A stretch of DNA of 64,000 nt from the IMG/VR virus record IMGVR_UViG_3300027996_002186, positions 310,001 through 374,000 of that record. One strand, written 5' to 3'. This document shows, piece after piece, positions 2,709 to 52,341 of this stretch (the stretch's first letter is position 1; the number at the start of each line of letters is the position of its first letter). The position numbers were made by a program, and so were the translations under genes. The notes beneath the pieces were generated by a model. It did not search any database. It was not told the DNA's origin and was given only the letters and a program-made list of their open reading frames with translations.

Positions 2709-2985
2709 TTAATTACAAATTAATTTGGTAGAACGAAAGTCTATCCGTATATTTGTAAGACAATTAAAGAGAACCAGTAGTTTGCGGTTTGTTCCATAAA
2801 ACTATAATACGTCATACTTTAATTGTTTTTTGAAAATAATTATAAATAAATTAGGTAGAAGAGAAAAGTCTCCTTATATTTGTAAGAACAAACAAAGACA
2901 ATGAAGTCTTCAAAAAATAAAAAAAGAAATTATAAATAAATTAGGTAGAACGAAAAACTCTACTTATATTTGTAAGACAAACAAA
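2709..2985 (+). promoter_or_regulatory. Three tandem near-identical Bacteroidota-type promoters
   Basis: Repeat unit AAATWAATT(T/A)GGTAGAA..N..TATATTTGTAAGA; -7 boxes TATATTTG at 2748-2755, 2875-2882 and 2965-2972, each 20 nt after TTTG/TTAG. Confidence 0.75.
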
Positions 2986-2992
2986 ACAAAAT

Positions 2993-3088
2993 GGTCGGTT
3001 CGTCTAGTGGCTGGTTTTCTCTTGAGAGAATCTTAGGACGGTAACCTTTTCGGGTTACAGACAGAGTGTTCGATTCCTCTACCGACTA
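2993..3088 (+). tRNA. Atypical tRNA-Glu-derived element 1 (D-loop hairpin insertion, non-canonical anticodon arm)
   Basis: Acceptor GGTCGGT/ACCGACT; D-stem GTC/GAC with TAGTGG; ~22-nt hairpin insert 3011-3033; anticodon arm GTAACC-TTTTCG-GGTTAC; T-loop TTCGATT with a bulged stem; no encoded CCA. Confidence 0.7.
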
Positions 3089-3090
3089 CA

Positions 3091-4020
3091 AGAAGTTACT
3101 CAACGGAGTAACATATGTTCTTTGAAATGTTAAATACACAGAAACTCGACTTCGGTCTTAGAGTTCTTCGGAACAGAGTGGATGTAGGGCGGCTTATAGT
3201 CCTTAAATAAACCACGAAAGTGGGATAAAGTGGATACAATGTGTAAAATGTGTCTGCGGCTCGAACCTAGTTTGAGCTCGAGTAAGCAAGTGAGATATCA
3301 CCAATCTTGAAGTACCGAGGGTAACTCCGTAGGGAAATGGATTCGTGACTGGGCAATTTGTAGGTGTTCAGTTGAGGTCGGAAGACCAATAAGAATAACT
3401 CATAGAGATTATTACAAGAAGTGTTGACTATCCGGTTAATACCATTGTGTGTCTCAATCTGAGAGGTATCTCAAAGTCGAAAGACAATTCTTCGTACAGG
3501 TGGTGCTGTTGTAGAACATTAATCTCTCTACCAAGAGAGTAGATTGTAGCAGTCTAACAAACGTACAGTTGTGATGAAGATATCTTAAATGGTTGTGGTG
3601 GAGGCATCACACGGAGAAGTCCAGTATTCTTGAGACCAAAAATTTTGAGAGCTGAGAGGTAACCACTCCTTCGAAACAATCTACAAACACTTAAATTTAA
3701 TTTTAATTCAAAACTAAAAATAAATCGAAAGTGTTACCTAGTTACTAGTGAAAGGTGACTACTTAGTCGTGAATCGTTCACGGCCACGAAAGCTCGAAAG
3801 GCGGACGTGATTTCACTGAAAAACTTATAGGGTGTCGAAACCCGAATCAGGATGCGAATCTTGAATAAGCAGAGTAAGTGGAGAGTAATTAGTAACTCAA
3901 GAAGTGGTTAGTCTAACTAACCGTCACTGACAAGATACCGTTCACAAAAGAAACGGTGGATAAGTTGGGAATTAATAATCCAACTAAAGACTTGTCACTT
4001 AAAGATGTAATCTCAGTCTT
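3091..4020 (+). ncRNA. Large ornate structured RNA, GOLLD-like
   Basis: No ORF; GC content far above flanks; many UUCG/GNRA-capped hairpins (3148-3157, 3163-3174, 3212-3223, 3476-3485, 3848-3863); long-range pairs TGACAAG 3928-3934/CTTGTCA 3991-3997 and CTGAGA 3652-3657/TCTCAG 4011-4016; tRNA-adjacent phage context and size fit GOLLD; family assignment from recall only. Confidence 0.7.
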
Positions 4021-4028
4021 TTTTATAT

Positions 4029-4123
4029 GGTCAGTTCGTCTAGTGGTGGGGTCTCTTTTAAGATACTCCGAGGACAGTAACCTTTTCGGGTTATAAACAT
4101 TGGTTCGAATCCAATACTGACTA
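4029..4123 (+). tRNA. Atypical tRNA-Glu-derived element 2 (same architecture as element 1)
   Basis: Acceptor GGTCAGT/ACTGACT; D-loop hairpin insert GGGGTCTCTTTTAAGATACTCC (4048-4069); anticodon arm GTAACC-TTTTCG-GGTTAT; canonical T-arm ATTGG-TTCGAAT-CCAAT. Confidence 0.72.
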
Positions 4124-4201
4124 CAAAGTTTTCGTAGTGGTTAACTTCTCTTTAATTAGAGGGTCTGTTTTGAACAGTTTTGATTACCTAACATCATCTA
4201 T

Positions 4202-4239
4202 AAACCCATCAATAGATTTATTTCATTGATGGGTTTTTT
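4202..4239 (+). terminator. Intrinsic terminator closing the RNA locus
   Basis: AAACCCATCAAT / ATTGATGGGTTT followed by a T-run. Confidence 0.75.
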
Positions 4240-4286
4240 ATTTATATACAATTTGTAAACTTTTCCTTTTAAAATAAAATAATAGT

Positions 4287-4898
4287 ATGGGAAAAGAGAT
4301 GTTGAAAAATAAAGAGCTTAGGATGATGGGGTTAGTGCCTTACAACCTATCAGATATACAAAAAGGTATTCAATTTGGACACGCTGTTGTTGAGTATAGT
4401 CAAATGATTAAAAAATCCAATAAAATTACTCATATAAATAGATATGAAGATTGGGCAGATAACTGGAAAACATTTATAATATTGAATGGTGGTACATCAA
4501 ATCATTCGGTTAATAGGTATCAACCAAATGAGGAATTTATCGGGTCTATGGAAACAAATCTAGAGACTCTAAAAAAGGCCGGAATACCAGTTGGTGTTTT
4601 TTATGAACCAGATCTAAATGATATGTTATCGGGTATTGTTTTCGTAGTTCAAGAAGAAGTTTTTAATAAAAAGGATTATCCTGATTTTGAAGATTGGGTT
4701 ATTGAAAATTATGGTGGTTTATTAAAAGTAGATACTGATAATCAATCATATGCTGAATCATCTAAACAACTATCGATGATGATTAAATATTCAGAGGATG
4801 AACATGATCAAAAAATCTATAATAAATGGGTTGATTTCGTTGGTGGTAGTAGTAACGCATTTATGAAAGAATTTTTAATAAATTTTAGTTTAGCATAA
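4287..4898 (+). CDS. Peptidyl-tRNA hydrolase 2 (Pth2)-like protein
   Basis: QFGHAVVE, FIILNGG and FYEPDLNDMLSGIVF motifs as in phage Pth2-like proteins. Confidence 0.6.
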   Translation: MGKEMLKNKELRMMGLVPYNLSDIQKGIQFGHAVVEYSQMIKKSNKITHINRYEDWADNWKTFIILNGGTSNHSVNRYQPNEEFIGSMETNLETLKKAGIPVGVFYEPDLNDMLSGIVFVVQEEVFNKKDYPDFEDWVIENYGGLLKVDTDNQSYAESSKQLSMMIKYSEDEHDQKIYNKWVDFVGGSSNAFMKEFLINFSLA

Positions 4899-5320
4899 TG
4901 TCTATACCAGTATTAAAACAAAATAATAAACCACAAAGTAAATGGTTTAAAATAAAGGATGATACATTTTATTCTGAATCTATTTCCTGTCAGTTATCAA
5001 TAGGTTCTCATAGTGATATTGATATATCACTGGATTTAAATAAATATACGAATTATAGAAAATACTTTTATGATTTATTTGATAAGATGTATAATGCTAA
5101 TACTGGTCAACACGGATATAAGAAAGATTATATCTTTGATATAATAACCGCACATTGGAGAGGCATTGGATGTAGTATAAAAAGTATGGATATAAATACG
5201 AATGGTTTGCTAAACTTAGATATACGTTGTGACTATATAGATATGGAGAATATACAAGAAAGAAGAGAAAATATACTCAATGATATTTTAAATGAAACTT
5301 CTGATAAGAAAAATATATAA
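4898..5320 (+). CDS. Tail-tube-fold-like small protein with C-terminal RxxI/K tag
   Basis: KKDYIFD..HWRGIGCSIKSMD..LDIRCDY resembles tube proteins; ends RENILNDIL. Confidence 0.4.
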   Translation: MSIPVLKQNNKPQSKWFKIKDDTFYSESISCQLSIGSHSDIDISLDLNKYTNYRKYFYDLFDKMYNANTGQHGYKKDYIFDIITAHWRGIGCSIKSMDINTNGLLNLDIRCDYIDMENIQERRENILNDILNETSDKKNI

Positions 5321-5338: not shown

Positions 5339-7453
5339 ATGGAAGAAAATAAAGAGAAAGAATATTTGGATAAAGTTGAAGAAGTGAAAGCTTCAATTGA
5401 TGATGGTGGTGATGAGGATAGATACATTTCTTCTAAGAAACCAGACCCGAAATCTAAAACTCCGGTATTAGATACTTATAGTCGTGATCTAACTAAGATG
5501 GCAGAAGATGGTAAGCTTGATCCAATTGTTGGAAGAGAAAAGGAAATCGAAAGAGTTTCTCAAATTCTTTCAAGAAGAAAGAAAAATAATCCGATTCTAA
5601 TCGGTGAACCAGGGGTTGGTAAATCTACTATCGCAGAGGGATTAGCACTTAGAATAGTTCAAAGAAAAGTTAGTAGAATTCTTTTTAATAAAAGAATTGT
5701 AATGCTTGATTTAGCTTCTATGGTAGCTGGTACTAAGTATAGAGGACAGTTTGAAGAAAGAATCAAAGCTCTTATGTCAGAACTTGAAAAAGATCCTGAT
5801 ATTGTTCTTTTCATTGATGAAATTCATACTATTATCGGTGCTGGTGGTGCATCAGGTTCACTTGACGCATCCAATATGTTCAAACCAGCATTAGCTCGTG
5901 GTGAAATACAAATCATTGGAGCAACTACACTTGATGAGTACAGAAAGCATATCGAAAAAGATGGGGCACTTGAAAGAAGATTTCAAAAGGTAGTTGTTGA
6001 GCCAGCAACACCAGAAGAGTCAATTCAAATTTTAAGTAACATACTTGATAGATATGAAGACCATCATAATGTTACTTATACACCAGATGCTATTAAGGCT
6101 TGTGTTGAATTAACAACAAGATATATGAATGATAGATTCTTACCAGATAAGGCTATTGATGCTCTTGATGAATCTGGGGCTAGAGTACATATCGCTAATA
6201 TAATTGTTCCAAAGGAAATAACTTCCATTGAGAAAAAGATTGTCGATATTAAAGAAATGAAGAACGATGTTATACGTTCTCAGAAATATGAAGAAGCGGC
6301 TAAACTAAGAGATGTTGAAAGACAACTTAATGAATCTTTGGATATAGCAAGACAAGCTTGGGAGGATGATTCAAAAAACAATAGACAAACTGTAACTGAT
6401 GAAAATGTTGCTGAAGTTATTTCGATGATGACTGGTGTACCTGTTAGTAAGGTAAACGAGAAAGAGAATACAAAACTTGGAAAGATGAAAGATGTAGTAT
6501 CATCTAAAGTTATTGGACAAGATGAGGCTGTTAAAAAGATTGTGAAAGCTATTCAGAGAGGTCGTGTTGGACTTAAAGACCCGAATAAACCAATTGGTTC
6601 ATTTATGTTCTTGGGACCTACTGGTGTTGGTAAAACACAATTAGCCAAAGAATTGACCAAGTATCTTTTCGACTCAGAAGAGTCTTTAATTAGAATTGAT
6701 ATGTCAGAGTATATGGAGAAATTCGCAGTGTCTAGATTGATTGGAGCACCTCCGGGATATGTTGGTCACGATGAGGGTGGACAATTAACTGAAAAAGTTA
6801 GAAGAAAACCTTATTCTGTAATCTTACTTGATGAGATTGAAAAAGCTCACCCAGAAGTATTTAACTTACTACTTCAAGTATTAGATGATGGTCAATTAAC
6901 TGATTCACTTGGAAGAAAGGTGAACTTCAAGAATACGATTATTATTATGACATCAAATACTGGTTCTCGTCAATTAAAAGATTTTGGTAATGGTGTTGGA
7001 TTTTCAACAAAAGCAAAACAATCGTCTAAAGGTGAACACTCCAATGCGGTTATTGATAAAGAGTTGAAGAAAAAATTCGCACCCGAATTCTTAAATCGTG
7101 TTGATGATATCATTATGTTTAACTCTTTAGATAGAGAAGATATTAATGAGATAATCAAGATTGAAGTTGCTAAAGTTGTTGAAAGAGTTGAGCAAATGGA
7201 ATTCACACTTGACTTTACAGACGAGTCTATCAATTATATAGCTGGTGAAGGATTTGATCCTCAATATGGGGCTAGACCTTTGAAAAGAGCAATTCAAAGA
7301 CACGTTGAAGATGTTCTAACAGAAGAAATCATTGAATCTAATCCACCTAAAGGATCTAAGTTAACACTTGATTATGATAGTGAAAATGAGAAAATGATTG
7401 TTCTTACTAAGAAGAAAAGAGCTACTCGTAAGAAAAAAGAGGGTGATGAATAA
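5339..7453 (+). CDS. clpC: ClpC-type Hsp100 AAA+ ATPase lacking the N-terminal Clp_N domain
   Basis: Two Walker A motifs (GEPGVGKS, GPTGVGKT), FIDEIH, UVR motif KYEEAAKLRD, GVGF ClpP-docking loop, GARPLKR. Confidence 0.9.
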   Translation: MEENKEKEYLDKVEEVKASIDDGGDEDRYISSKKPDPKSKTPVLDTYSRDLTKMAEDGKLDPIVGREKEIERVSQILSRRKKNNPILIGEPGVGKSTIAEGLALRIVQRKVSRILFNKRIVMLDLASMVAGTKYRGQFEERIKALMSELEKDPDIVLFIDEIHTIIGAGGASGSLDASNMFKPALARGEIQIIGATTLDEYRKHIEKDGALERRFQKVVVEPATPEESIQILSNILDRYEDHHNVTYTPDAIKACVELTTRYMNDRFLPDKAIDALDESGARVHIANIIVPKEITSIEKKIVDIKEMKNDVIRSQKYEEAAKLRDVERQLNESLDIARQAWEDDSKNNRQTVTDENVAEVISMMTGVPVSKVNEKENTKLGKMKDVVSSKVIGQDEAVKKIVKAIQRGRVGLKDPNKPIGSFMFLGPTGVGKTQLAKELTKYLFDSEESLIRIDMSEYMEKFAVSRLIGAPPGYVGHDEGGQLTEKVRRKPYSVILLDEIEKAHPEVFNLLLQVLDDGQLTDSLGRKVNFKNTIIIMTSNTGSRQLKDFGNGVGFSTKAKQSSKGEHSNAVIDKELKKKFAPEFLNRVDDIIMFNSLDREDINEIIKIEVAKVVERVEQMEFTLDFTDESINYIAGEGFDPQYGARPLKRAIQRHVEDVLTEEIIESNPPKGSKLTLDYDSENEKMIVLTKKKRATRKKKEGDE

Positions 7454-32763: not shown

Positions 32764-34046
32764 AATTTTAATAATATTTTTAATGTATAATCTTCTATAT
32801 CCCTATCATCATCGAATTGTCTATCTCCTCTACTCTTCCCGAAAATAACCTCACCGTGGTCCATTGTTGGTAATATTGTTGGTAAAACTTCATCTAACCC
32901 AGATTCTAATTTCCTTAAATTCATCGGTACTGATTTATACGGGTACATACCAACAATACCCTGATCAGTATTACCTATATCAATATAAACACAAGGAACA
33001 TACATAGTTAATATGTTTGCTGGGCTATAATTACGCAATTTTTGTAAATCATATTTATTTTTAACTATGATATCACTATTTCTAACAACCTCATAGTTCA
33101 TAATATCAAAGTTAACACATTGGAATTTTTTATCAGTTACATATTCCTCAGCTTCATCTTGTCTGATATAAACATCATTTTTATACCCACCTATTTTAAA
33201 TGTCGGTAACATAATTGATCTAATTATATCTCTCATTATCATATAAAACCTACTATCATCTTCTGTATCATAAACAGGCATTGTTCCATTATATTTATTC
33301 TTAATTGGTTCATCTTTTTTATAATAATCACCATAAGTTATAGCAGTTGTGACCCATTTACCCTTTTCAGTTGGTATTTCATCCCATATATCATATAGTC
33401 TATCATTAACATAATCTATATCAACTTTCTTCATAGAATTCCAAGTTTTAGTCAAATAATCTTCGATTATACCATACCATTTATCACCAATAAAATGGTT
33501 TGTCCATTTTTTAATATCAGACTCACTTAATTTATTATTCTTCATATTCTGATAATATAAATCATTATAAAAATCAAAAATGCTATATCTTTCTTCGTTG
33601 GATTCATTTAAACTCTCATCCATTGAATTTAATAAATCACCATAATCATCCTCTGAATAAATAAGTAATGATATACCTGGATAACTAAACTCTTCACCAC
33701 CATAAACATCGATGAATCTATCTAATGACATCCAATCTTGTTCCTTTGTAACTTCTACATCAACACCATATCCTTCATCAGCTCTCCAAACATAATCTTC
33801 TATTCTTTTAACAGCATCCTTTATATCATCCCATCTCCAAATCTCATCATTCTTTCTATAAATACCAACACATACCGATCTTATTGAGTCTGAAAACATA
33901 GGTGGTGTGTAATTAGTCTCATCTATAACTACACCAAATCCATCATCAGATAATTCTAATACAATATCCTCTAATTCTCTTTTTAGATTGGAGAATCTAG
34001 TAGAGTCTTCTGATTCAAATAGTTTATATTTCTTTAAGTATTTCAC
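32760..34046 (-). CDS. Putative virion internal protein
   Basis: MKYLKKYKLFES leader; DIVLELSDDG module; internal ESLNES linker. Confidence 0.6.
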   Translation of the reverse strand: MKYLKKYKLFESEDSTRFSNLKRELEDIVLELSDDGFGVVIDETNYTPPMFSDSIRSVCVGIYRKNDEIWRWDDIKDAVKRIEDYVWRADEGYGVDVEVTKEQDWMSLDRFIDVYGGEEFSYPGISLLIYSEDDYGDLLNSMDESLNESNEERYSIFDFYNDLYYQNMKNNKLSESDIKKWTNHFIGDKWYGIIEDYLTKTWNSMKKVDIDYVNDRLYDIWDEIPTEKGKWVTTAITYGDYYKKDEPIKNKYNGTMPVYDTEDDSRFYMIMRDIIRSIMLPTFKIGGYKNDVYIRQDEAEEYVTDKKFQCVNFDIMNYEVVRNSDIIVKNKYDLQKLRNYSPANILTMYVPCVYIDIGNTDQGIVGMYPYKSVPMNLRKLESGLDEVLPTILPTMDHGEVIFGKSRGDRQFDDDRDIEDYTLKILLKF

Positions 34047-35353
34047 TTTCTAATTACTTTAATTCTTTCTGTTTGATACTTCATTATATCAACATCTTGA
34101 TGCTCTGTTAATAAATCAACAATACCTTGATACATTTGTATTGTTATTTTACAATCTGTAATAGCATCGTGATAACCACTCATATTAATACCAAGTACTG
34201 GTCCTATTTTAGACATAGATGATGATATTAATCCATTATCTCTTGGTGAAGTACCAATAAAATCTATTTTCTCTTGAAAAGATGGGTCAGTCTCAGCTAA
34301 CTTCTGTAACAATGGTAAAAAGTATAATTGTATCAACATCTTAGTATCAAATACTTCATTCACAATCTTATTACCATATCTACCACTCAACATAGCCATA
34401 TCAAATGCCGCGTTTTGTGCAATTAATAAACAAGGTTCGTATTCACCTATGAATTTAAAGAAATCATTAACAACAGTTTCTTCGTCTTTGTACTTATATC
34501 CGCCACTACCATAATGGTTGAATCCTAAAACCCATTTAGTTCTATCTTCTGGTTCGTTATATTTAGACTTAGTATCATTTGTTAGTTTTATTTTCTCATC
34601 AAATTGTCCTAACTCCTTGAATTCGTTATTATCAAAATCACATTCAGTTACTAAACAAGATACTTGTGTTAATTGTTCTTTCTTTGGACCATTTAATCCT
34701 GTTGTTTCCACATCAACAAAAATCCAAGGCATATCAGTTTTAGAATCTAACCAAGAAAGTATTTCGGGTATTGATTTATACCACATCTTATTTTCATTTA
34801 TTGATTCTGAAACGTTATTAACTTCAAATTTGAATTCCTTACCATCAGCATGTGAATAAGTAACTTTATCAATGTTCTTAACATTATATTTATAATCGGG
34901 TTTTAGATATTTCTTACCCATACCTTTTTTAACATAAGCAATTGTTATATGTGGTTTATATTCTGGGTATTCATTTGAATTTGGTAATTCGGATAATTCA
35001 TCAAAAAGATTTTGTAATGATCCCTGTGGGTTAATATTGAATTTAACAACATCAAATTTATCATTCTCAAATATATCAACACCATCAACTTCTATATTTA
35101 TATCACCTTCAAAGGTATCGAATATAGACTTAACTTCCTCATTTGATACTTCCTTATGTAAACCATATAAAAGTGTAAGGTGTGGTCTCTTTTGTACACC
35201 ATACGTTGAATCACCGTCACTTTCATAGATGTCTTCTGGGTCTATCCAAGATGTTATTTCTTCCCAATTATTAACTGGTACGTCAACCATAACACAACCA
35301 TATTCATAGCCGTTTATTGATTCTTTAATAAATTCTTTATATTTCTTTAACAT
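34043..35353 (-). CDS. 2H phosphoesterase + DEDDh 3'-5' exonuclease fusion
   Basis: PHLTLLY and PHITIAY (two HxT motifs); FVDVETTG, AQNAAFD, HDAITD; MLKKYKEFIKES leader; ESINE linker between the domains. Confidence 0.8.
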   Translation of the reverse strand: MLKKYKEFIKESINGYEYGCVMVDVPVNNWEEITSWIDPEDIYESDGDSTYGVQKRPHLTLLYGLHKEVSNEEVKSIFDTFEGDINIEVDGVDIFENDKFDVVKFNINPQGSLQNLFDELSELPNSNEYPEYKPHITIAYVKKGMGKKYLKPDYKYNVKNIDKVTYSHADGKEFKFEVNNVSESINENKMWYKSIPEILSWLDSKTDMPWIFVDVETTGLNGPKKEQLTQVSCLVTECDFDNNEFKELGQFDEKIKLTNDTKSKYNEPEDRTKWVLGFNHYGSGGYKYKDEETVVNDFFKFIGEYEPCLLIAQNAAFDMAMLSGRYGNKIVNEVFDTKMLIQLYFLPLLQKLAETDPSFQEKIDFIGTSPRDNGLISSSMSKIGPVLGINMSGYHDAITDCKITIQMYQGIVDLLTEHQDVDIMKYQTERIKVIRK

Positions 35354-42712: not shown

Positions 42713-42898
42713 TTATCCATTAAATACTTTATTAATTTTATTTTTCCTATTACTTTGTTTAATATCGGTCCAAATATCTGAACGAAAAGTTAATGATTTC
42801 CACTCACCACTTTGAAAAATATAGTTATTTGATTCAATCGTGTTATAATAAATATCTCCTTCTATTGGATTCTCTGGTACTGTTGATAATACCAACAT
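42713..42898 (-). CDS. Mini-protein with fibre-like repeat and C-terminal tag
   Basis: PENPIEGDIYYNT..YIFQSGEW; ends RKNKINKVF. Confidence 0.5.
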   Translation of the reverse strand: MLVLSTVPENPIEGDIYYNTIESNNYIFQSGEWKSLTFRSDIWTDIKQSNRKNKINKVFNG

Positions 42899-43989
42899 TA
42901 AGCTTCAAAATTCTTAGATCTCTTTAGTTTTTCAAGTATATACTTTTCATCCATTGAAATCTTCGTTGGTATTCTAATATTAACAACTACGAATAAATCA
43001 CCCAATCCTAAATTAACATCAGGTATACCTTTTCCAGAAACTCTTATAGTTCTTCCGTGAGGTGTTCCTTCATCGATAGTAATTGGTAATTCACCGTGTG
43101 GTGTTTTAACTTTAAGATGTGCTCCTAAGATAGCATCTATAACGGATACTTCTTTCTCAACAATTAAATTATTACTATCTCTTTTGAAATAGAATTCTCT
43201 GAGTTCATCTATCATAATATGTAAATCCCCAGGAACACCATCTCTTACATGATTACCATAACTTCTCATATTAAGTTGCATACCGGCAGAAACACCAGCC
43301 GGGATATCTACCTCAACAACTTCATCTTTAACACTTGTACCACTTCCGTGACAAACACCACATTTATTACTGATTTGTTTACCACCGCCTTGACAATCTG
43401 GACAAGTTGCTTGTTGTCTAACTTGTCCGAATGGTGTCTGTTGTAAAACCACTCTACTTCCTCTACCACCACAAGGAATACAATCTTTAACACCAGATCC
43501 TCCTTTACCAGAACAACTATTACAAGAATCCTGTCTCTTATATTTTATCTTCTTAGTAGTACCATTTAAGACATCCTCAATCGACAATGTAACTTTTATT
43601 CTTAAATCAGATCCTCTATTTTTCCTTCTTTGTTTTGGTCCGCCGAATTGTCCGCCGCTTCCGAAAATATCACCAAATTGACTAAAAATATCTTCCATAT
43701 TAAATCCATGACCATATTGACCACCGTCACCTCCTCCACCATTGGAGAATGGATTACCTTGTCCAAATGGACTACCACCTGGTCCATATCTATCATAACT
43801 TTCTCTCTTTTCTTTAGATGAGAGTGTATCATATGCTTCTGCTGCTTCTTTGAATTTAGATTCAGACTCAGCATTTCCTGGGTTTTTATCTGGGTGATGT
43901 TTCATCGCCATTTTGCGATAAGCTCTCTTAATCTGATCCTCAGATGCCGTCTTATCTACTCCTAGTGTGTTGTAATAATCTTTTGCCAT
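42898..43989 (-). CDS. dnaJ: DnaJ co-chaperone
   Basis: J-domain HPD, G/F-rich region, four CxxCxGxG zinc repeats. Confidence 0.95.
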
Positions 43990-48128: not shown

Positions 48129-49394
48129 ATGAAGAAATTGTCAAAATATTTAGAATTTATAAATGAAAGCTCAGATTACAAGGGTTATTCAATTCCTTCT
48201 TATAAGGAAGCTGTTGAGTTATGCTCAAAAAATGCTGCTTTTTATGAATCTAAAATGATTGTTGATGGATTTAATGTATCTGTATTCAATTACAGACTAA
48301 CAAGTTATAAGGATTTTGCTAACCCTCTTGATCACAAACCAGAATTAAAAGGTTATGAAATGAGGGGGTTAACATTCATTTTTAATGAAGATGGTACATT
48401 ATTCAATAGATATGTGTTGCTTGAAAAATTCTTTAATATAAATCAAGTTCCGGAATCAATGTATTCCATTGTTAAGGATTATAAAATAAAATATGTTAAT
48501 AATAAAGAAGATGGTTCAATAGCGACATTCGTGAAATTACCAAATGGTAAAATTGTTGGTAAATCTAAAATGGGGTTTGATAATGACCAATCAAATGGTA
48601 TTAATAGAATATATCAAAATGATACTGAAATAAAGACATTAGTTAACTGGTGTTTAGATAATGATATAATACCTATATTTGAATATGTCGCTCCTCATAA
48701 TAGAATTGTATTGAGATATACACAAGAGGAATTGATACTTTTAAGATTAAGAGATAATAAAACCGGTAAACATATCGATATACAAGACCACTTAGATAAG
48801 ATTGGTTCGACTAAGATTGCTCCATTCGAAGATGATCACCAAGGTAACTTGGATAAGTTAATTGAATTGGTTGCTAATCAAGTTGATAAAGAGGGATGTG
48901 TTGTACAAGCTGAGGATAGTGAAGGTAGAGATTTCTTCTTCAAATTAAAGACTCCTTGGTATTGTGAGCGTCATGGTTTATTAACTAATGATATTTACAG
49001 AGAACACATTATAATAGGATATATCTTAGATGATAAGATTGATGATATTCTTAGTCAAATACCAGAGGATGAAGTTGAAGCACATACAAGAATAAATAAG
49101 ATTATTGTAATAGTTAAGAGAGCTATAGATGATAAGATGGAAGATATCAAGAAGTCATATCAGGTATTTCTTGATATGGGGGAAGACAGAAAAGAGTATG
49201 CTCTTACACATATGAAGGCAGAACCTAACTTCTGTTATGTTATGAATTTAGCAAACGGTAAAGATCTTTATGATATAGCTAAAGAGCACGTAAGAGATAA
49301 GACTAAGAGGTTGATGATATCAAGAGATTGGTTACAGAAAATAGACCCAACACTTTTCTTCCAAGACCCGGAAGAAGATGAAGAGAATAATTAA
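48129..49394 (+). CDS. rnl1: T4 Rnl1-family RNA ligase
   Basis: LEKFFN, KEDGS (motif I), EY..P.NRIV, EGCV, FKLKTPWY; leader MKKLSKYLEFINES. Confidence 0.85.
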   Translation: MKKLSKYLEFINESSDYKGYSIPSYKEAVELCSKNAAFYESKMIVDGFNVSVFNYRLTSYKDFANPLDHKPELKGYEMRGLTFIFNEDGTLFNRYVLLEKFFNINQVPESMYSIVKDYKIKYVNNKEDGSIATFVKLPNGKIVGKSKMGFDNDQSNGINRIYQNDTEIKTLVNWCLDNDIIPIFEYVAPHNRIVLRYTQEELILLRLRDNKTGKHIDIQDHLDKIGSTKIAPFEDDHQGNLDKLIELVANQVDKEGCVVQAEDSEGRDFFFKLKTPWYCERHGLLTNDIYREHIIIGYILDDKIDDILSQIPEDEVEAHTRINKIIVIVKRAIDDKMEDIKKSYQVFLDMGEDRKEYALTHMKAEPNFCYVMNLANGKDLYDIAKEHVRDKTKRLMISRDWLQKIDPTLFFQDPEEDEENN

Positions 49395-50460: not shown

Positions 50461-52341
50461 ATGAGTAAAGAAACTACAATAATTGGTATTGACTTAGGAA
50501 CAACAAATAGTTGTTTAGCAGTTGTTCAAGGTGGAGAACCTATTGTTATTACTAATTCAGAAGGTAAGAGAACTACCCCATCAGTTGTTGGATTCACAGA
50601 CAATGATAGAAAGATTGGTGATCCAGCCAAAAGACAAGCGGTTACTAATCCTGAGAAAACTGTTTATTCAATTAAACGTTTCATAGGTAAAGACTTTTCT
50701 GTTTGTAAAAGTGAAGTATCAAAGGTACCTTACAAGTTAGTAAAAACGGGGTCAAATGTCCCAGGTGTTAAAATAGATGATAGAGTCTATACACCACAAG
50801 AAATTTCAGCAATGATTCTACAAAAAATGAAGAAAACGGCTGAAGAGTTTTTAGGTCACGAGGTGGAAAGAGCAGTTATTACTGTTCCAGCTTATTTTGG
50901 TGATGCTGAAAGAACAGCAACTATCGAAGCAGGAGAAATTGCTGGTTTGAAAGTTGAAAGAATTATAAACGAACCAACTGCTGCAGCTTTAGCTTACGGG
51001 TTAGACAAAAAGAATACAGATTCTAAGATTCTTGTATTTGATTGTGGTGGTGGTACACATGATGTTTCAGTTTTAGAAATTGGTGATGGTGTTTTTGAAG
51101 TTAAATCTACGGATGGTGATACTCATTTAGGTGGTGATGATTTCGATAATGCGATTATTGACTGGATGGTAAAAGAATTCAAATCAGAATATGGTATGGA
51201 TTTAACAAAAGATCCAATGGCTCTTCAAAGGTTGAAGGAAGCTGGTGAAAAAGCAAAAATCGAGTTATCAACATCAACACAAACTGAAATAAATCTACCT
51301 TACATCACAGCTAAAGATGGTACACCGTTACACTTTGTTAAGAAGTTATCAAACTCTAAGTTTGAACAAATGACTTCTAAGTTAGTGGATAGAACTATCG
51401 CTTGTGCGAAAAGTGCTCTCAAAAGCGCAGGGTTGAAACCAGCAGACATTGACGAGGTTATACTTGTTGGTGGTTCTACTAGAATCCCAGCTATTCAAAA
51501 AGCTGTTGAAGATTATATTGGTAAAACACCTAATAAATCAGTAAACCCAGATGAAGTTGTTGCTCTTGGAGCGGCTATTCAAGGAGCTGTTTTAGGAGGA
51601 GGAATTACAGATGTTTTACTTCTTGATGTAACACCCCTTTCACTAGGTATTGAAACAATGGGGTCAGTAATGACTAGATTGATTGATGCTAATACAACGA
51701 TTCCTACTCGTAAGGCGGAAACGTTTTCAACGGCATCTGATAATCAACCATCTGTTGAGATTCATGTTTTACAAGGTGAAAGACCAATGGCAAAAGATAA
51801 TCGTGACTTAGGTAGATTCCATTTAGATGGTATAATGCCCGCTCCAAGAGGTATTCCTCAAGTTGAAGTTACATTAGATATCGATGCTAATGGAATCCTT
51901 TCTGTTTCTGCTAAAGATAAGGCTACTGGTAAAGAGAATAAAATTCGAATTGAAGGTGGTTCTCAATTATCTAAAGAAGAAATTGAAAGAATGAAGTCTG
52001 AAGCTGAGGCTAACGCTGAAACAGATAAAATCGAAAGAGATAAAGTTGATAAACTTAATGAAGTAGATAACTTAATGTTTCAGACAAATAAGCAGATGAA
52101 GGAATTCTCTGAACAATTAACGGAGGAGGATGTTAATTCTCTAAAGTCTGATCTTGAAGAGGTTCAAAAAGCTCATTCTGAACAAGACATTGAAAAGATG
52201 GATGAAACATCCAAGAAATTGAGTGAAACTTGGTCAGTAATCAGTACTAGGCTATACCAAGAAACAAATGAGGCCGAATCGACAGAAGAGGTCGTAGATG
52301 AAGGTGAAGTGGAAGACACTCCATTTGAAGAGGTAGATTAA
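50461..52341 (+). CDS. dnaK: DnaK (Hsp70)
   Basis: [32 protein letters not shown]-like linker DVLLLDV, GIETMG. Confidence 0.97.

What the first reader, a model, noticed from the sequence alone, without database searches (positions are those of the whole stretch)
2709..4898. Possible tRNA-punctuation cassette that excises the giant RNA
Seen: the order is promoter x3, tRNA-mimic, giant RNA, tRNA-mimic, terminator, Pth2-like gene. The giant RNA fills the interval between the two mimics almost exactly (3089-4028). Known: RNase P cuts 5' of tRNA folds and RNase Z or exonucleases mature their 3' ends, as in mitochondrial punctuation. Inference: the mimics keep acceptor and T arms only to recruit host processing and release the giant RNA with precise ends, or they are its cargo. 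This may be an undescribed phage RNA system.
Basis: inference. Interest (0 to 1): 0.8.

Follow-up and report, generated by a model that had tools for sequence, protein, structure and literature searches.

The report
GOLLD RNA flanked by tRNA-Glu-like genes
A giant lake phage carries a non-coding RNA operon in which the large cage-forming GOLLD RNA sits between two odd tRNA-Glu look-alikes; these belong to a widespread, apparently undescribed phage RNA family and are more than cutting signals.

Summary
Window 2724-4242 is one same-strand non-coding unit. It has three Bacteroidota-type promoters, a tRNA-like gene (2993-3088), GOLLD (3095-4019; Rfam 278 bits), a second tRNA-like gene (4029-4123), a conserved three-hairpin spacer, and a terminator. 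A gene with a Pth2 fold follows.

The "mimics" keep all four arms. They derive from tRNA-Glu and belong to a family of about 95 distinct sequences, found almost only in viral and lake-metagenome DNA. The cloverleaf is supported by covariation. The anticodon loop is sealed into a 6-bp stem with a U(U/A)UUCR hexaloop. D-loop hairpin inserts range from 0 to over 100 nt.

Sixty-one percent of well-flanked family loci hold a GOLLD, always on the same strand. In GOLLD relatives the 5' neighbour is a mimic or an ordinary tRNA-Met (31 of 33). A 3' mimic is present in only 14 of 38; the others end at a terminator. The family also occurs without GOLLD.

Release of GOLLD by tRNA-type processing is therefore plausible: U at -1 in 94%, fixed gaps of 6 and 9-14 nt. 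It is optional and untested. GOLLD lying next to tRNAs is already published; the mimic family appears not to be.

The parts
2724..2755 (+). Promoter 1, Bacteroidota sigma-A type: -33 TTTG at 2724-2727, -7 box TATATTTG at 2748-2755; predicted start near 2760
   Evidence: -7 box consensus and its position (-12 to -5) from PMC9723704. Orthologous motifs seen in L001 and L002.
2760..2832 (+). Possible small RNA from promoter 1: long AU-rich stem followed by U6
   Evidence: Fold -13.9 kcal/mol, z -2.3. 97% conserved in L062 only. Weak evidence.
2851..2882 (+). Promoter 2: -33 TTAG, -7 box TATATTTG at 2875-2882
   Evidence: Repeat family, 3 copies against 0 expected.
2941..2972 (+). Promoter 3: -33 TTAG, -7 box TATATTTG at 2965-2972; predicted start near 2977, about 16 nt before the first tRNA-like gene
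2993..3088 (+). tRNA-Glu-derived tRNA-like gene 1: G1.U72, A73, a 23-nt hairpin inserted in the D loop, 6-bp stem with UUUUCG hexaloop, one bulged U in the T stem
   Evidence: Model R1, 71 bits, E 1e-19. Missed by ARAGORN and by Rfam tRNA. Insert folds as a hairpin.
3095..4019 (+). GOLLD RNA: variable 5' domain 3095-3611, conserved 3' domain 3612-4019
   Evidence: Rfam RF02032, 278.4 bits. First hairpin at 3095-3112. Homologous over its full length in L001 and L002.
4029..4123 (+). tRNA-Glu-derived tRNA-like gene 2: 24-nt D-loop hairpin, same hexaloop, regular T arm; 78% identical to copy 1
   Evidence: Rfam tRNA 43.5 bits. R1 78.7 bits. Centroid fold is a cloverleaf plus insert hairpin. Identity.
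4127..4197 (+). Conserved three-hairpin spacer RNA with an invariant 18-nt 5' segment (GUUUUCGUAGUGGUUAAC)
   Evidence: 32 distinct copies in related loci, each starting 2-3 nt after a tRNA-like gene. RNAalifold finds 17 pairs, 4 of them with compensatory changes.
4202..4242 (+). Intrinsic terminator: 12-bp hairpin plus U6
   Evidence: Fold. Aligned to a terminator stem. A hairpin of different sequence plus a U run sits at the same place in L001.
4287..4898 (+). Gene for a 203-aa protein: Pth2 (peptidyl-tRNA hydrolase 2) fold at residues 10-119, plus a helical C-terminal part
   Evidence: AlphaFold pLDDT 85.3. Foldseek top hits are all Pth2: probability 1.0, TM by target 0.58-0.70. PHROG 3668 'hydrolase', E 3e-16. 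No Pfam or PDB sequence hit. Lies downstream of the RNA cluster in about 25 related loci.

Best explanation
The locus is a polycistronic non-coding RNA operon of a roughly 0.5 Mb phage whose promoters are of the Bacteroidota type. Up to three tandem sigma-A promoters drive one transcript: leader, tRNA-Glu-like RNA 1, GOLLD, tRNA-Glu-like RNA 2, three-hairpin spacer RNA, terminator.

The two tRNA-like RNAs are conserved products in their own right. They are tRNA-Glu derivatives in which the anticodon loop is closed into a 6-bp stem with a U(U/A)UUCR hexaloop, and a hairpin is grafted into the D loop.

Because they keep a normal acceptor/T-arm module and the junction signals of real tRNA genes, host RNase P should cut at G1 of each, and a 3' tRNA-processing activity should cut after A73. 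As a by-product this would free GOLLD with a 5' leader of about 6 nt and a U-rich 3' tail of about 9 nt.

Shown here: the parts, their order, family membership, covariation, co-occurrence with GOLLD and the junction conservation. Inferred: the cleavages themselves and any function of the tRNA-like RNAs.
For: - Parts and spacing.
- Cloverleaf: 95.9% of cells paired against 73.5% in shuffles; covariation score 0.561 against 0.136, and at most 0.096 when partners are slid.
- Loop closure: the closing pair covaries, mostly C-G but U-A five times, G-C once and U.G once.
- tRNA-Glu ancestry: the best-scoring ordinary tRNA under the family model is a cellular tRNA-Glu (64.8 bits; every other clearly ordinary tRNA in the loci first searched scored under 50). 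Ordinary phage tRNA-Glu(UUC) genes share the same acceptor stem.
- Junction signals: U(-1) 94%, A73 98%, C74 97%, A76 86%; tRNA-Met genes have the same tail.
- Fixed gap of 9-14 nt between the GOLLD 3' end and the next mimic in 14 distinct GOLLDs.
- Co-occurrence: 48 of 89 mimic loci hold a GOLLD, 20 of 33 among those with at least 1.6 kb on both sides, and 85 of 85 copies share its strand. Starting from the Pth2-like protein instead, 3 of 4 distinct gene neighbourhoods (5 of the 6 loci fetched) show tRNA-Met, GOLLD, mimic just upstream.
- The family is almost absent from 185,579 cellular genomes: one true member.
Against: - No transcript ends were measured.
- Copy 1 has a bulged T stem, and both copies carry D-loop hairpins at the tRNA elbow, which RNase P contacts. 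Cleavage efficiency is therefore unknown.
- In 24 of 38 related GOLLDs there is no 3' mimic and a terminator follows directly. In some, a promoter lies between the upstream tRNA and GOLLD. GOLLD maturation therefore does not depend on this arrangement.
- Published structural work raises the alternative that tRNAs stay covalently linked to GOLLD.
Confidence: 0.55

Rival explanations
1. The tRNA-like modules are not cut off. They stay covalently joined to GOLLD and work as appendages of the multimeric GOLLD cage, as displayed or stored tRNA-like domains.
For: - Spacers are very short (6 and 9 nt) and the strand is always the same.
- D-loop inserts include GNRA-capped hairpins that could make tertiary contacts.
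- The hexaloop UUUUC is complementary to the single conserved GAAAA in an internal loop of the GOLLD 3' domain.
- Published papers propose covalently linked or embedded tRNAs on GOLLD cages.
Against: - The junctions keep the same U(-1) and A73-C74 signals as genuine tRNA genes.
- The family occurs in 50 loci without GOLLD.
- Mimics are often separated from GOLLD by the spacer element, a promoter or a terminator.
- The GAAAA/UUUUC pairing cannot be tested by covariation, because both sides are invariant.
Confidence: 0.15
2. They are working tRNA-Glu variants used in translation, for example resistant to a host anticodon nuclease, or frameshift-prone because the loop can open to 8 nt. They sit next to GOLLD only because GOLLD lives in tRNA islands.
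For: - All four arms, the tRNA-Glu-type D arm (U11-A24, U13.G22), A46 and the 4-nt variable loop are kept.
- The triplet UUC followed by a purine is retained in the loop.
- In one 26-tRNA phage array the hexaloop gene is the only Glu-type gene in the part held.
- The window also encodes a T4-type RNA ligase 1, a tRNA-repair enzyme.
Against: - Covariation of the closing pair argues for a sealed 6-nt loop.
- D-loop inserts of 12 to over 100 nt at the elbow, and a bulged T stem, are hard to fit into elongation factor and ribosome binding.
- Another GOLLD clade carries sister RNAs whose anticodon arm is replaced by unrelated hairpins, including UUCG tetraloops.
- An ordinary tRNA-Glu coexists in one array.
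Confidence: 0.15
3. The flanking copies are mainly a DNA-level feature: duplicated tRNA-like repeats left by, or promoting, recombination that moves the GOLLD cassette, with little RNA function.
For: - In L001 two 95-nt copies that are 100% identical flank tRNA-Met plus GOLLD.
- The position of the mimics relative to GOLLD varies among relatives.
Against: - Strong compensatory covariation in all four stems, and in the insert hairpins, shows selection on RNA structure.
- The window's two copies are only 78% identical.
- Copies occur singly and without GOLLD.
Confidence: 0.05

Closest known systems
GOLLD RNA in phage and prophage tRNA islands (Rfam RF02032; Kretsch et al., bioRxiv 10.1101/2024.12.08.627333; PMC6582537; PMC12990946)
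   Same: A GOLLD gene lying next to tRNA genes. Relatives of this locus have tRNA-Met directly upstream, as reported for the env-38 GOLLD used for cryo-EM.
   Different: Here the neighbours are a dedicated family of non-canonical tRNA-Glu derivatives (hexaloop, D-loop hairpins). I could not find this family described in the held literature.
tRNA punctuation of polycistronic transcripts (mitochondrial model; bacterial operons with tRNAs beside other RNAs) - from established knowledge
   Same: tRNA folds directly abutting another RNA, so that RNase P and 3' tRNA processing would define that RNA's ends.
   Different: It is facultative here. Most relatives end GOLLD at a terminator, and some start it at its own promoter. 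The flanking elements also have conserved features unrelated to cleavage.
MALAT1/mascRNA-type tRNA-like 3'-end processing - from established knowledge
   Same: A tRNA-like, non-decoding fold immediately 3' of a long non-coding RNA that could recruit RNase P to make its 3' end.
   Different: That system is eukaryotic and has no sequence relation. Here the tRNA-like RNA is a full cloverleaf derived from tRNA-Glu and also occurs on its own.
tRNAs with expanded anticodon loops, i.e. frameshift suppressors such as SufJ (PMC4238358)
   Same: One extra nucleotide in the anticodon arm compared with a normal tRNA.
   Different: Covariation indicates that the extra base pairs with position 38, giving a 6-nt loop rather than an open 8-nt loop.
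Peptidyl-tRNA hydrolase 2 (Pth2/PTRH2, Pfam PF01981)
   Same: The downstream protein has the Pth2 fold at residues 10-119.
   Different: No sequence-level match to PF01981 or to Pth2 chains in the PDB. It has an extra C-terminal helical part of about 80 residues. Catalytic residues were not checked.

Membership tests
GOLLD RNA (Rfam RF02032) | Match to the covariance model of the conserved 3' domain above the gathering score (150 bits) | tested here: met
   278.4 bits, model positions 1-416 of 416, at window 3612-4019.
GOLLD RNA (Rfam RF02032) | A variable 5' domain of several hundred nt joined to the 3' domain, total length around 800 nt or more | tested here: met
   3095-3611 is non-coding and conserved with L001 and L002. 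Total length about 925 nt.
tRNA (Rfam RF00005; ARAGORN) | Cloverleaf recognised by standard tRNA finders | tested here: inconclusive
   ARAGORN finds neither copy. Rfam tRNA passes for 4029-4123 (43.5 bits against a threshold of 29) but reports nothing for 2993-3088.
tRNA (Rfam RF00005; ARAGORN) | Seven-nucleotide anticodon loop presenting a triplet | tested here: not met
   The arm is 18 nt. The closing pair covaries (C-G, U-A, G-C, U.G), giving a 6-bp stem and a 6-nt loop. ARAGORN labels insert-free relatives 'tRNA-???', with a 2-nt anticodon.
tRNA-Glu isotype | tRNA-Glu-type core: UCGUCUAG.GG...AGGAC D arm with U11-A24 and U13.G22, A46, 4-nt variable loop, UUC in the loop | tested here: met
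   These positions are invariant or nearly so in alignment A2, although AGGAC and the loop were fixed by the search pattern. A cellular tRNA-Glu is the top-scoring ordinary tRNA under R1. Ordinary phage tRNA-Glu(UUC) genes share the acceptor stem.
tRNA-Glu isotype | Charged by GluRS and used to decode GAA/GAG | not testable with these tools
   Needs aminoacylation and translation assays.
tRNA-punctuated transcript | tRNA folds directly abut the RNA to be released, on the same strand and in one transcription unit | tested here: met
   Gaps of 6 and 9 nt; promoters upstream, and the only strong terminator lies after the second mimic.
tRNA-punctuated transcript | Mature ends produced by RNase P and RNase Z at the tRNA borders | not testable with these tools
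   Indirect support only: U(-1) 94%, A73 98%, C74 97%.
tRNA-punctuated transcript | The arrangement is conserved in homologous loci | tested here: inconclusive
   The 5' neighbour is a tRNA or mimic in 31 of 33 relatives. A 3' mimic is present in only 14 of 38. In other GOLLD clades a tRNA lies near the 5' end in 27 of 57 and within 300 nt downstream in 11 of 65.
Pth2 (PF01981) | Sequence match to the Pfam family | tested here: not met
   No PF01981 hit even at E up to 10. A profile search of the PDB finds no Pth2.
Pth2 (PF01981) | Pth2 alpha/beta fold | tested here: met
   Foldseek: the top 11 PDB hits and all 30 listed Swiss-Prot hits are Pth2; probability 1.0 (0.94 for the eleventh PDB hit), TM by target up to 0.70.
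Bacteroidota sigma-A promoter | -7 box TAnnTTTG with a -33 TTTG about 20 nt upstream | tested here: met
   The -7 box is exact in all three copies. The -33 element is exact in promoter 1 and is TTAG in promoters 2 and 3.

The most novel reading that the evidence does not exclude
The hexaloop tRNA-Glu-like RNAs, GOLLD and the neighbouring Pth2-fold hydrolase form one functional module aimed at host translation or at tRNA-targeting defences. The tRNA-like RNAs would be dedicated partners or cargo of the GOLLD cage, for instance docking through the UUUUC hexaloop, GNRA-capped D-loop hairpins or the elbow. Alternatively they would be glutamylated decoys handled by the hydrolase. Either way they would offer the first concrete molecular partner for GOLLD.
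Probability: 0.2. Interest if true: 0.85.

Novelty: new variant of a known kind. Interest (0 to 1): 0.6.

Why it matters
GOLLD is one of the largest bacterial and phage non-coding RNAs. It is now known to assemble into 14-mer cages, and its function is unknown. This locus and about 40 distinct relatives show that in lake giant phages GOLLD travels with a specific, structurally elaborate family of tRNA-Glu derivatives, and often with a Pth2-fold protein.

That turns the general remark "GOLLD lies near tRNAs" into three testable questions:
- Are these RNAs cut out by RNase P?
- Do they bind the cage?
- Are they charged or hydrolysed?

Independently, the family (about 95 distinct sequences, nearly all viral) is a clear case of phages remodelling a tRNA into something that standard tRNA finders miss.

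Tried and rejected
- ARAGORN on the window found nothing, so standard tRNA finders are blind to these genes.
- Rfam at relaxed thresholds gave no hit for copy 1.
- The sigma-70 promoter scan was not enriched (11 found against 14.7 expected). The host-type motif TTTG-N18-22-TAnnTTTG is not enriched window-wide either (8 against 4.4). The promoter call therefore rests on the three-fold repeat plus the published -7 consensus.
- L003 and L004 are identical to the window and were dropped as evidence.
- My first D-arm-anchored pattern found only 3 viral loci. The anticodon-arm-to-T-loop pattern worked. Because that pattern fixes the loop sequence, I re-derived loop variation from covariance-model hits.
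- Two metagenome pattern hits (L027, L037) and four of the six genome hits (L120, L121, L123, L124) were chance matches; a fifth genome locus (L122) holds only ordinary tRNA-Glu genes.
- The idea that the spacer 4127-4197 is a third, degenerate mimic was not supported: no R1 hit.
- Kissing between the hexaloop and the GOLLD GAAAA is compatible with the data but untestable.
- Pfam and sequence searches of the PDB gave nothing for the downstream protein. One hhalign call was a self-comparison and is uninformative.
- Two key GOLLD papers (Weinberg 2009, Morgado 2020) were not in the held library.
Full report
**What is in the window.** Rfam finds one family above threshold in the 64 kb: GOLLD at 3612-4019 (+), 278.4 bits, covering the whole 416-position model of the conserved 3' domain. 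The 5' domain runs back to a hairpin at 3095-3112. ARAGORN finds no tRNA in the window. At relaxed thresholds the Rfam tRNA model hits 4029-4123 at 43.5 bits, with a 24-nt insertion in the D loop and one extra base in the anticodon loop; it finds nothing at 2993-3088.

Upstream lie three copies of a 34-nt repeat, none expected by chance. Each ends in TATATTTG. That is the TAnnTTTG -7 box of Bacteroidota sigma-A promoters, which sits at -12 to -5 (PMC9723704), so the third promoter would start transcription about 16 nt before 2993. Downstream, a 12-bp hairpin plus U6 at 4202-4242 is the only strong terminator. No ORF of 50 aa or more lies between 2657 and 4286.

**Source.** The closest annotated records are two uncultured phage genomes of 634,780 and 642,428 bp, at 85% and 75% identity over the RNA region. 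Contigs identical to the window reach 483-551 kb. ORFs read normally under the standard code.

**The flanking elements are a family.** In the two relatives the same elements recur. They share a G1.U72 acceptor stem, a UCGUCUAG.GG...AGGAC D arm, an anticodon-type stem whose sequence changes while pairing is kept, and the loop C-UUUUCR-G. One copy has no D-loop insert and one has an insert of about 50 nt.

A pattern spanning the D stem, that loop and the T loop found 14 loci in IMG/VR, 91 in JGI metagenomes and 6 in 185,579 cellular genomes. A few were chance matches (L027 and L037 in the metagenome set; L120, L121, L123 and L124 in the genome set), and a fifth genome locus (L122) holds only ordinary tRNA-Glu genes. 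That leaves a single true cellular member, in Novipirellula.

On 38 insert-free members the cloverleaf is strongly supported. 95.9% of cells are paired against 73.5% in shuffles. The covariation score is 0.561 against 0.136 in shuffles, and at most 0.096 when partners are slid. Fourteen of 22 pairs show double changes. A covariance model from this alignment (R1) hits exactly two places in the window: 4029-4123 (78.7 bits) and 2993-3088 (71 bits). In the loci first searched it largely separates family members (55 bits or more, about 150 hits) from ordinary tRNAs (under 50 bits). Genuine tRNA-Glu genes overlap the lower end of the family range, at about 55-67 bits, so score alone does not define membership.

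**They derive from tRNA-Glu, and the loop is sealed.** The best-scoring ordinary tRNA under R1 is a cellular tRNA-Glu(CUC) at 64.8 bits. Ordinary 72-nt phage tRNA-Glu(UUC) genes in GOLLD-bearing contigs have the same GGUCGGU/ACCGACUA acceptor stem as window copy 1, and a normal UUUUCAU loop.

My search pattern fixed the loop sequence, so I tabulated loops from model hits instead. Of 95 distinct sequences, 81 have C-UUUUCR-G. The rest keep U(U/A)UUC, but the flanking pair changes to U-A (5), G-C (1) or U.G (1). That covariation argues for a 6-bp stem and a 6-nt loop, not an open 8-nt anticodon loop.

D-loop length in distinct members ranges from 7-11 nt (no insert) through 16-57 nt among the sequences tabulated to over 100 nt. 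Of the 47 tabulated with a D loop of 18 nt or more, most fold as one or two hairpins (94% with z below -1). One class has a GNRA-capped hairpin with compensatory stem changes. The window's two copies are 78% identical.

**Link to GOLLD.** I built an nhmmer profile of the GOLLD 3' domain and ran it on the loci that had been found only through the mimic pattern. Forty-eight of 89 hold a GOLLD, as do 20 of 33 with at least 1.6 kb on both sides. All 85 mimic copies in those loci are on the GOLLD strand.

Over 41 distinct GOLLDs of this clade, the element at the 5' border is tRNA-Met in 17, a mimic in 14, absent in 2 and undetermined in 8. Within 25 nt of the 3' end there is a mimic in 14 (gaps 9-14 nt), nothing in 24 and undetermined in 3. 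Where nothing follows, a classical terminator comes within 10-70 nt. In a few loci a promoter lies between the upstream tRNA and GOLLD.

A GOLLD-first sample of IMG/VR gave 96 new loci, mostly of other GOLLD clades. There tRNA-Met is again the commonest neighbour. A tRNA lies near the 5' end in 27 of 57 determinable cases and within 300 nt downstream in 11 of 65. Eight of those loci carry Glu-like RNAs with D-loop inserts. Some are arrays of five or six whose anticodon arm is replaced by other hairpins.

Conversely, 50 mimic loci have no GOLLD in the part held. These include ordinary tRNA arrays and GC-rich contigs where the mimic stands alone.

**Processing signals.** Across 111 distinct junctions the base before G1 is U in 104. 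Position 1-72 is G.U in 147 of 152 and the discriminator is A in 149 of 152. The next bases are C (108/111), N, A (96/111). Genuine tRNA-Met genes in the same loci have the same A-C-A-A tail. U at -1 is the preferred RNase P context in bacteria (established knowledge). These features fit normal tRNA-type maturation, which would leave GOLLD with short flanks. No ends were measured.

**The downstream gene.** ORF 4287-4898 has no Pfam or PDB sequence match. It has more than 3,000 unnamed homologues and matches PHROG 3668 'hydrolase'. Its model (pLDDT 85.3) matches only Pth2 peptidyl-tRNA hydrolases over residues 10-119: probability 1.0, TM by target 0.58-0.70.

Homologues lie downstream on the same strand in about 25 mimic loci, with or without GOLLD. 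Starting from four homologous proteins, 3 of 4 distinct gene neighbourhoods (5 of the 6 loci fetched) show tRNA-Met, GOLLD, mimic upstream, then the Pth2-like gene, a small ORF and a ClpB-like ATPase. These phages are related, so this may be inherited gene order rather than functional coupling.

**Comparison with what is known.** The held literature already states that GOLLD lies in tRNA islands, that env-38 lies downstream of tRNA-Met, and that tRNAs or pseudo-tRNAs can be embedded in GOLLD. It offers 'covalently linked' or 'stored' tRNAs as hypotheses. I found no description of a tRNA-Glu-derived hexaloop or D-insert family, nor of RNase P processing of GOLLD precursors. Two key papers were not held, so this absence is not proof.

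**Verdict.** The punctuation idea is plausible, but it is facultative and is not the reason the mimics exist. The new element is the mimic family and its tight but non-obligate association with one GOLLD clade.

Noticed in passing
window 4127-4197; 32 distinct copies, e.g. L001 4470-4549, L007 953-1032, L056 874-953 and 1027-1106: A conserved spacer RNA of about 70 nt with three hairpins and an invariant 18-nt 5' segment (GUUUUCGUAGUGGUUAAC). It always starts 2-3 nt after a tRNA-like gene and usually precedes the next one. In the window it is followed by the terminator instead.
   Followed up: partly
window 2760-2832: The stretch after promoter 1 folds into a long AU-rich stem followed by U6 (z -2.3). 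It may be a separate small RNA. It is conserved only in the closest relative, L062.
   Followed up: partly
window 4898-5320 and 5339-7453: A 140-aa ORF and a two-domain ClpB/ClpA-like AAA+ ATPase follow the Pth2-fold gene. The same gene order recurs in relatives found by protein look-up (L125-L130).
   Followed up: partly
window 48129-49394, 34043-35353, 50461-52341, 42898-43989: The window also encodes a T4-type RNA ligase 1 (a tRNA-repair enzyme family), a 2H-phosphoesterase fused to an RNase T-like exonuclease (with a weak Acb1-like match), DnaK and DnaJ.
   Followed up: no
L001 2914-3001, L041, L072: A class-II-like tRNA-like gene with a long variable arm and a 6-nt loop (ARAGORN 'anticodon gt') sits behind its own promoter upstream of the cluster in some relatives. 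It gives a weak tmRNA-model match at 22.8 bits.
   Followed up: no
L010 81-240, L029, L050, L068, L015 394-579, L061, L072: Some family members carry D-loop inserts of 85-112 nt. These contain a T-loop-like hairpin (GGUGCCAAUCC or GGUGCUAAUCC), as if a second tRNA-type module were nested at the elbow.
   Followed up: no
L196 1323-2229, L170 1463-2237, L210 8109-8986, L204 4155-4619: A different GOLLD clade is accompanied by arrays of four to six tRNA-Glu-like RNAs with D-loop hairpins. Their anticodon arm is replaced by varied hairpins, including UUCG tetraloops.
   Followed up: partly
L119 352-425 (Novipirellula herctigrandis NZ_SJPJ01000002.1): The only true family member found in 185,579 cellular genomes (89 bits). 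I did not check whether it lies in a prophage.
   Followed up: no
L086 6287-13521: In a phage array of 26 tRNA genes the hexaloop Glu-like gene lies on the opposite strand. It is the only Glu-type gene in the part held, which leaves open a decoding role in that lineage.
   Followed up: no
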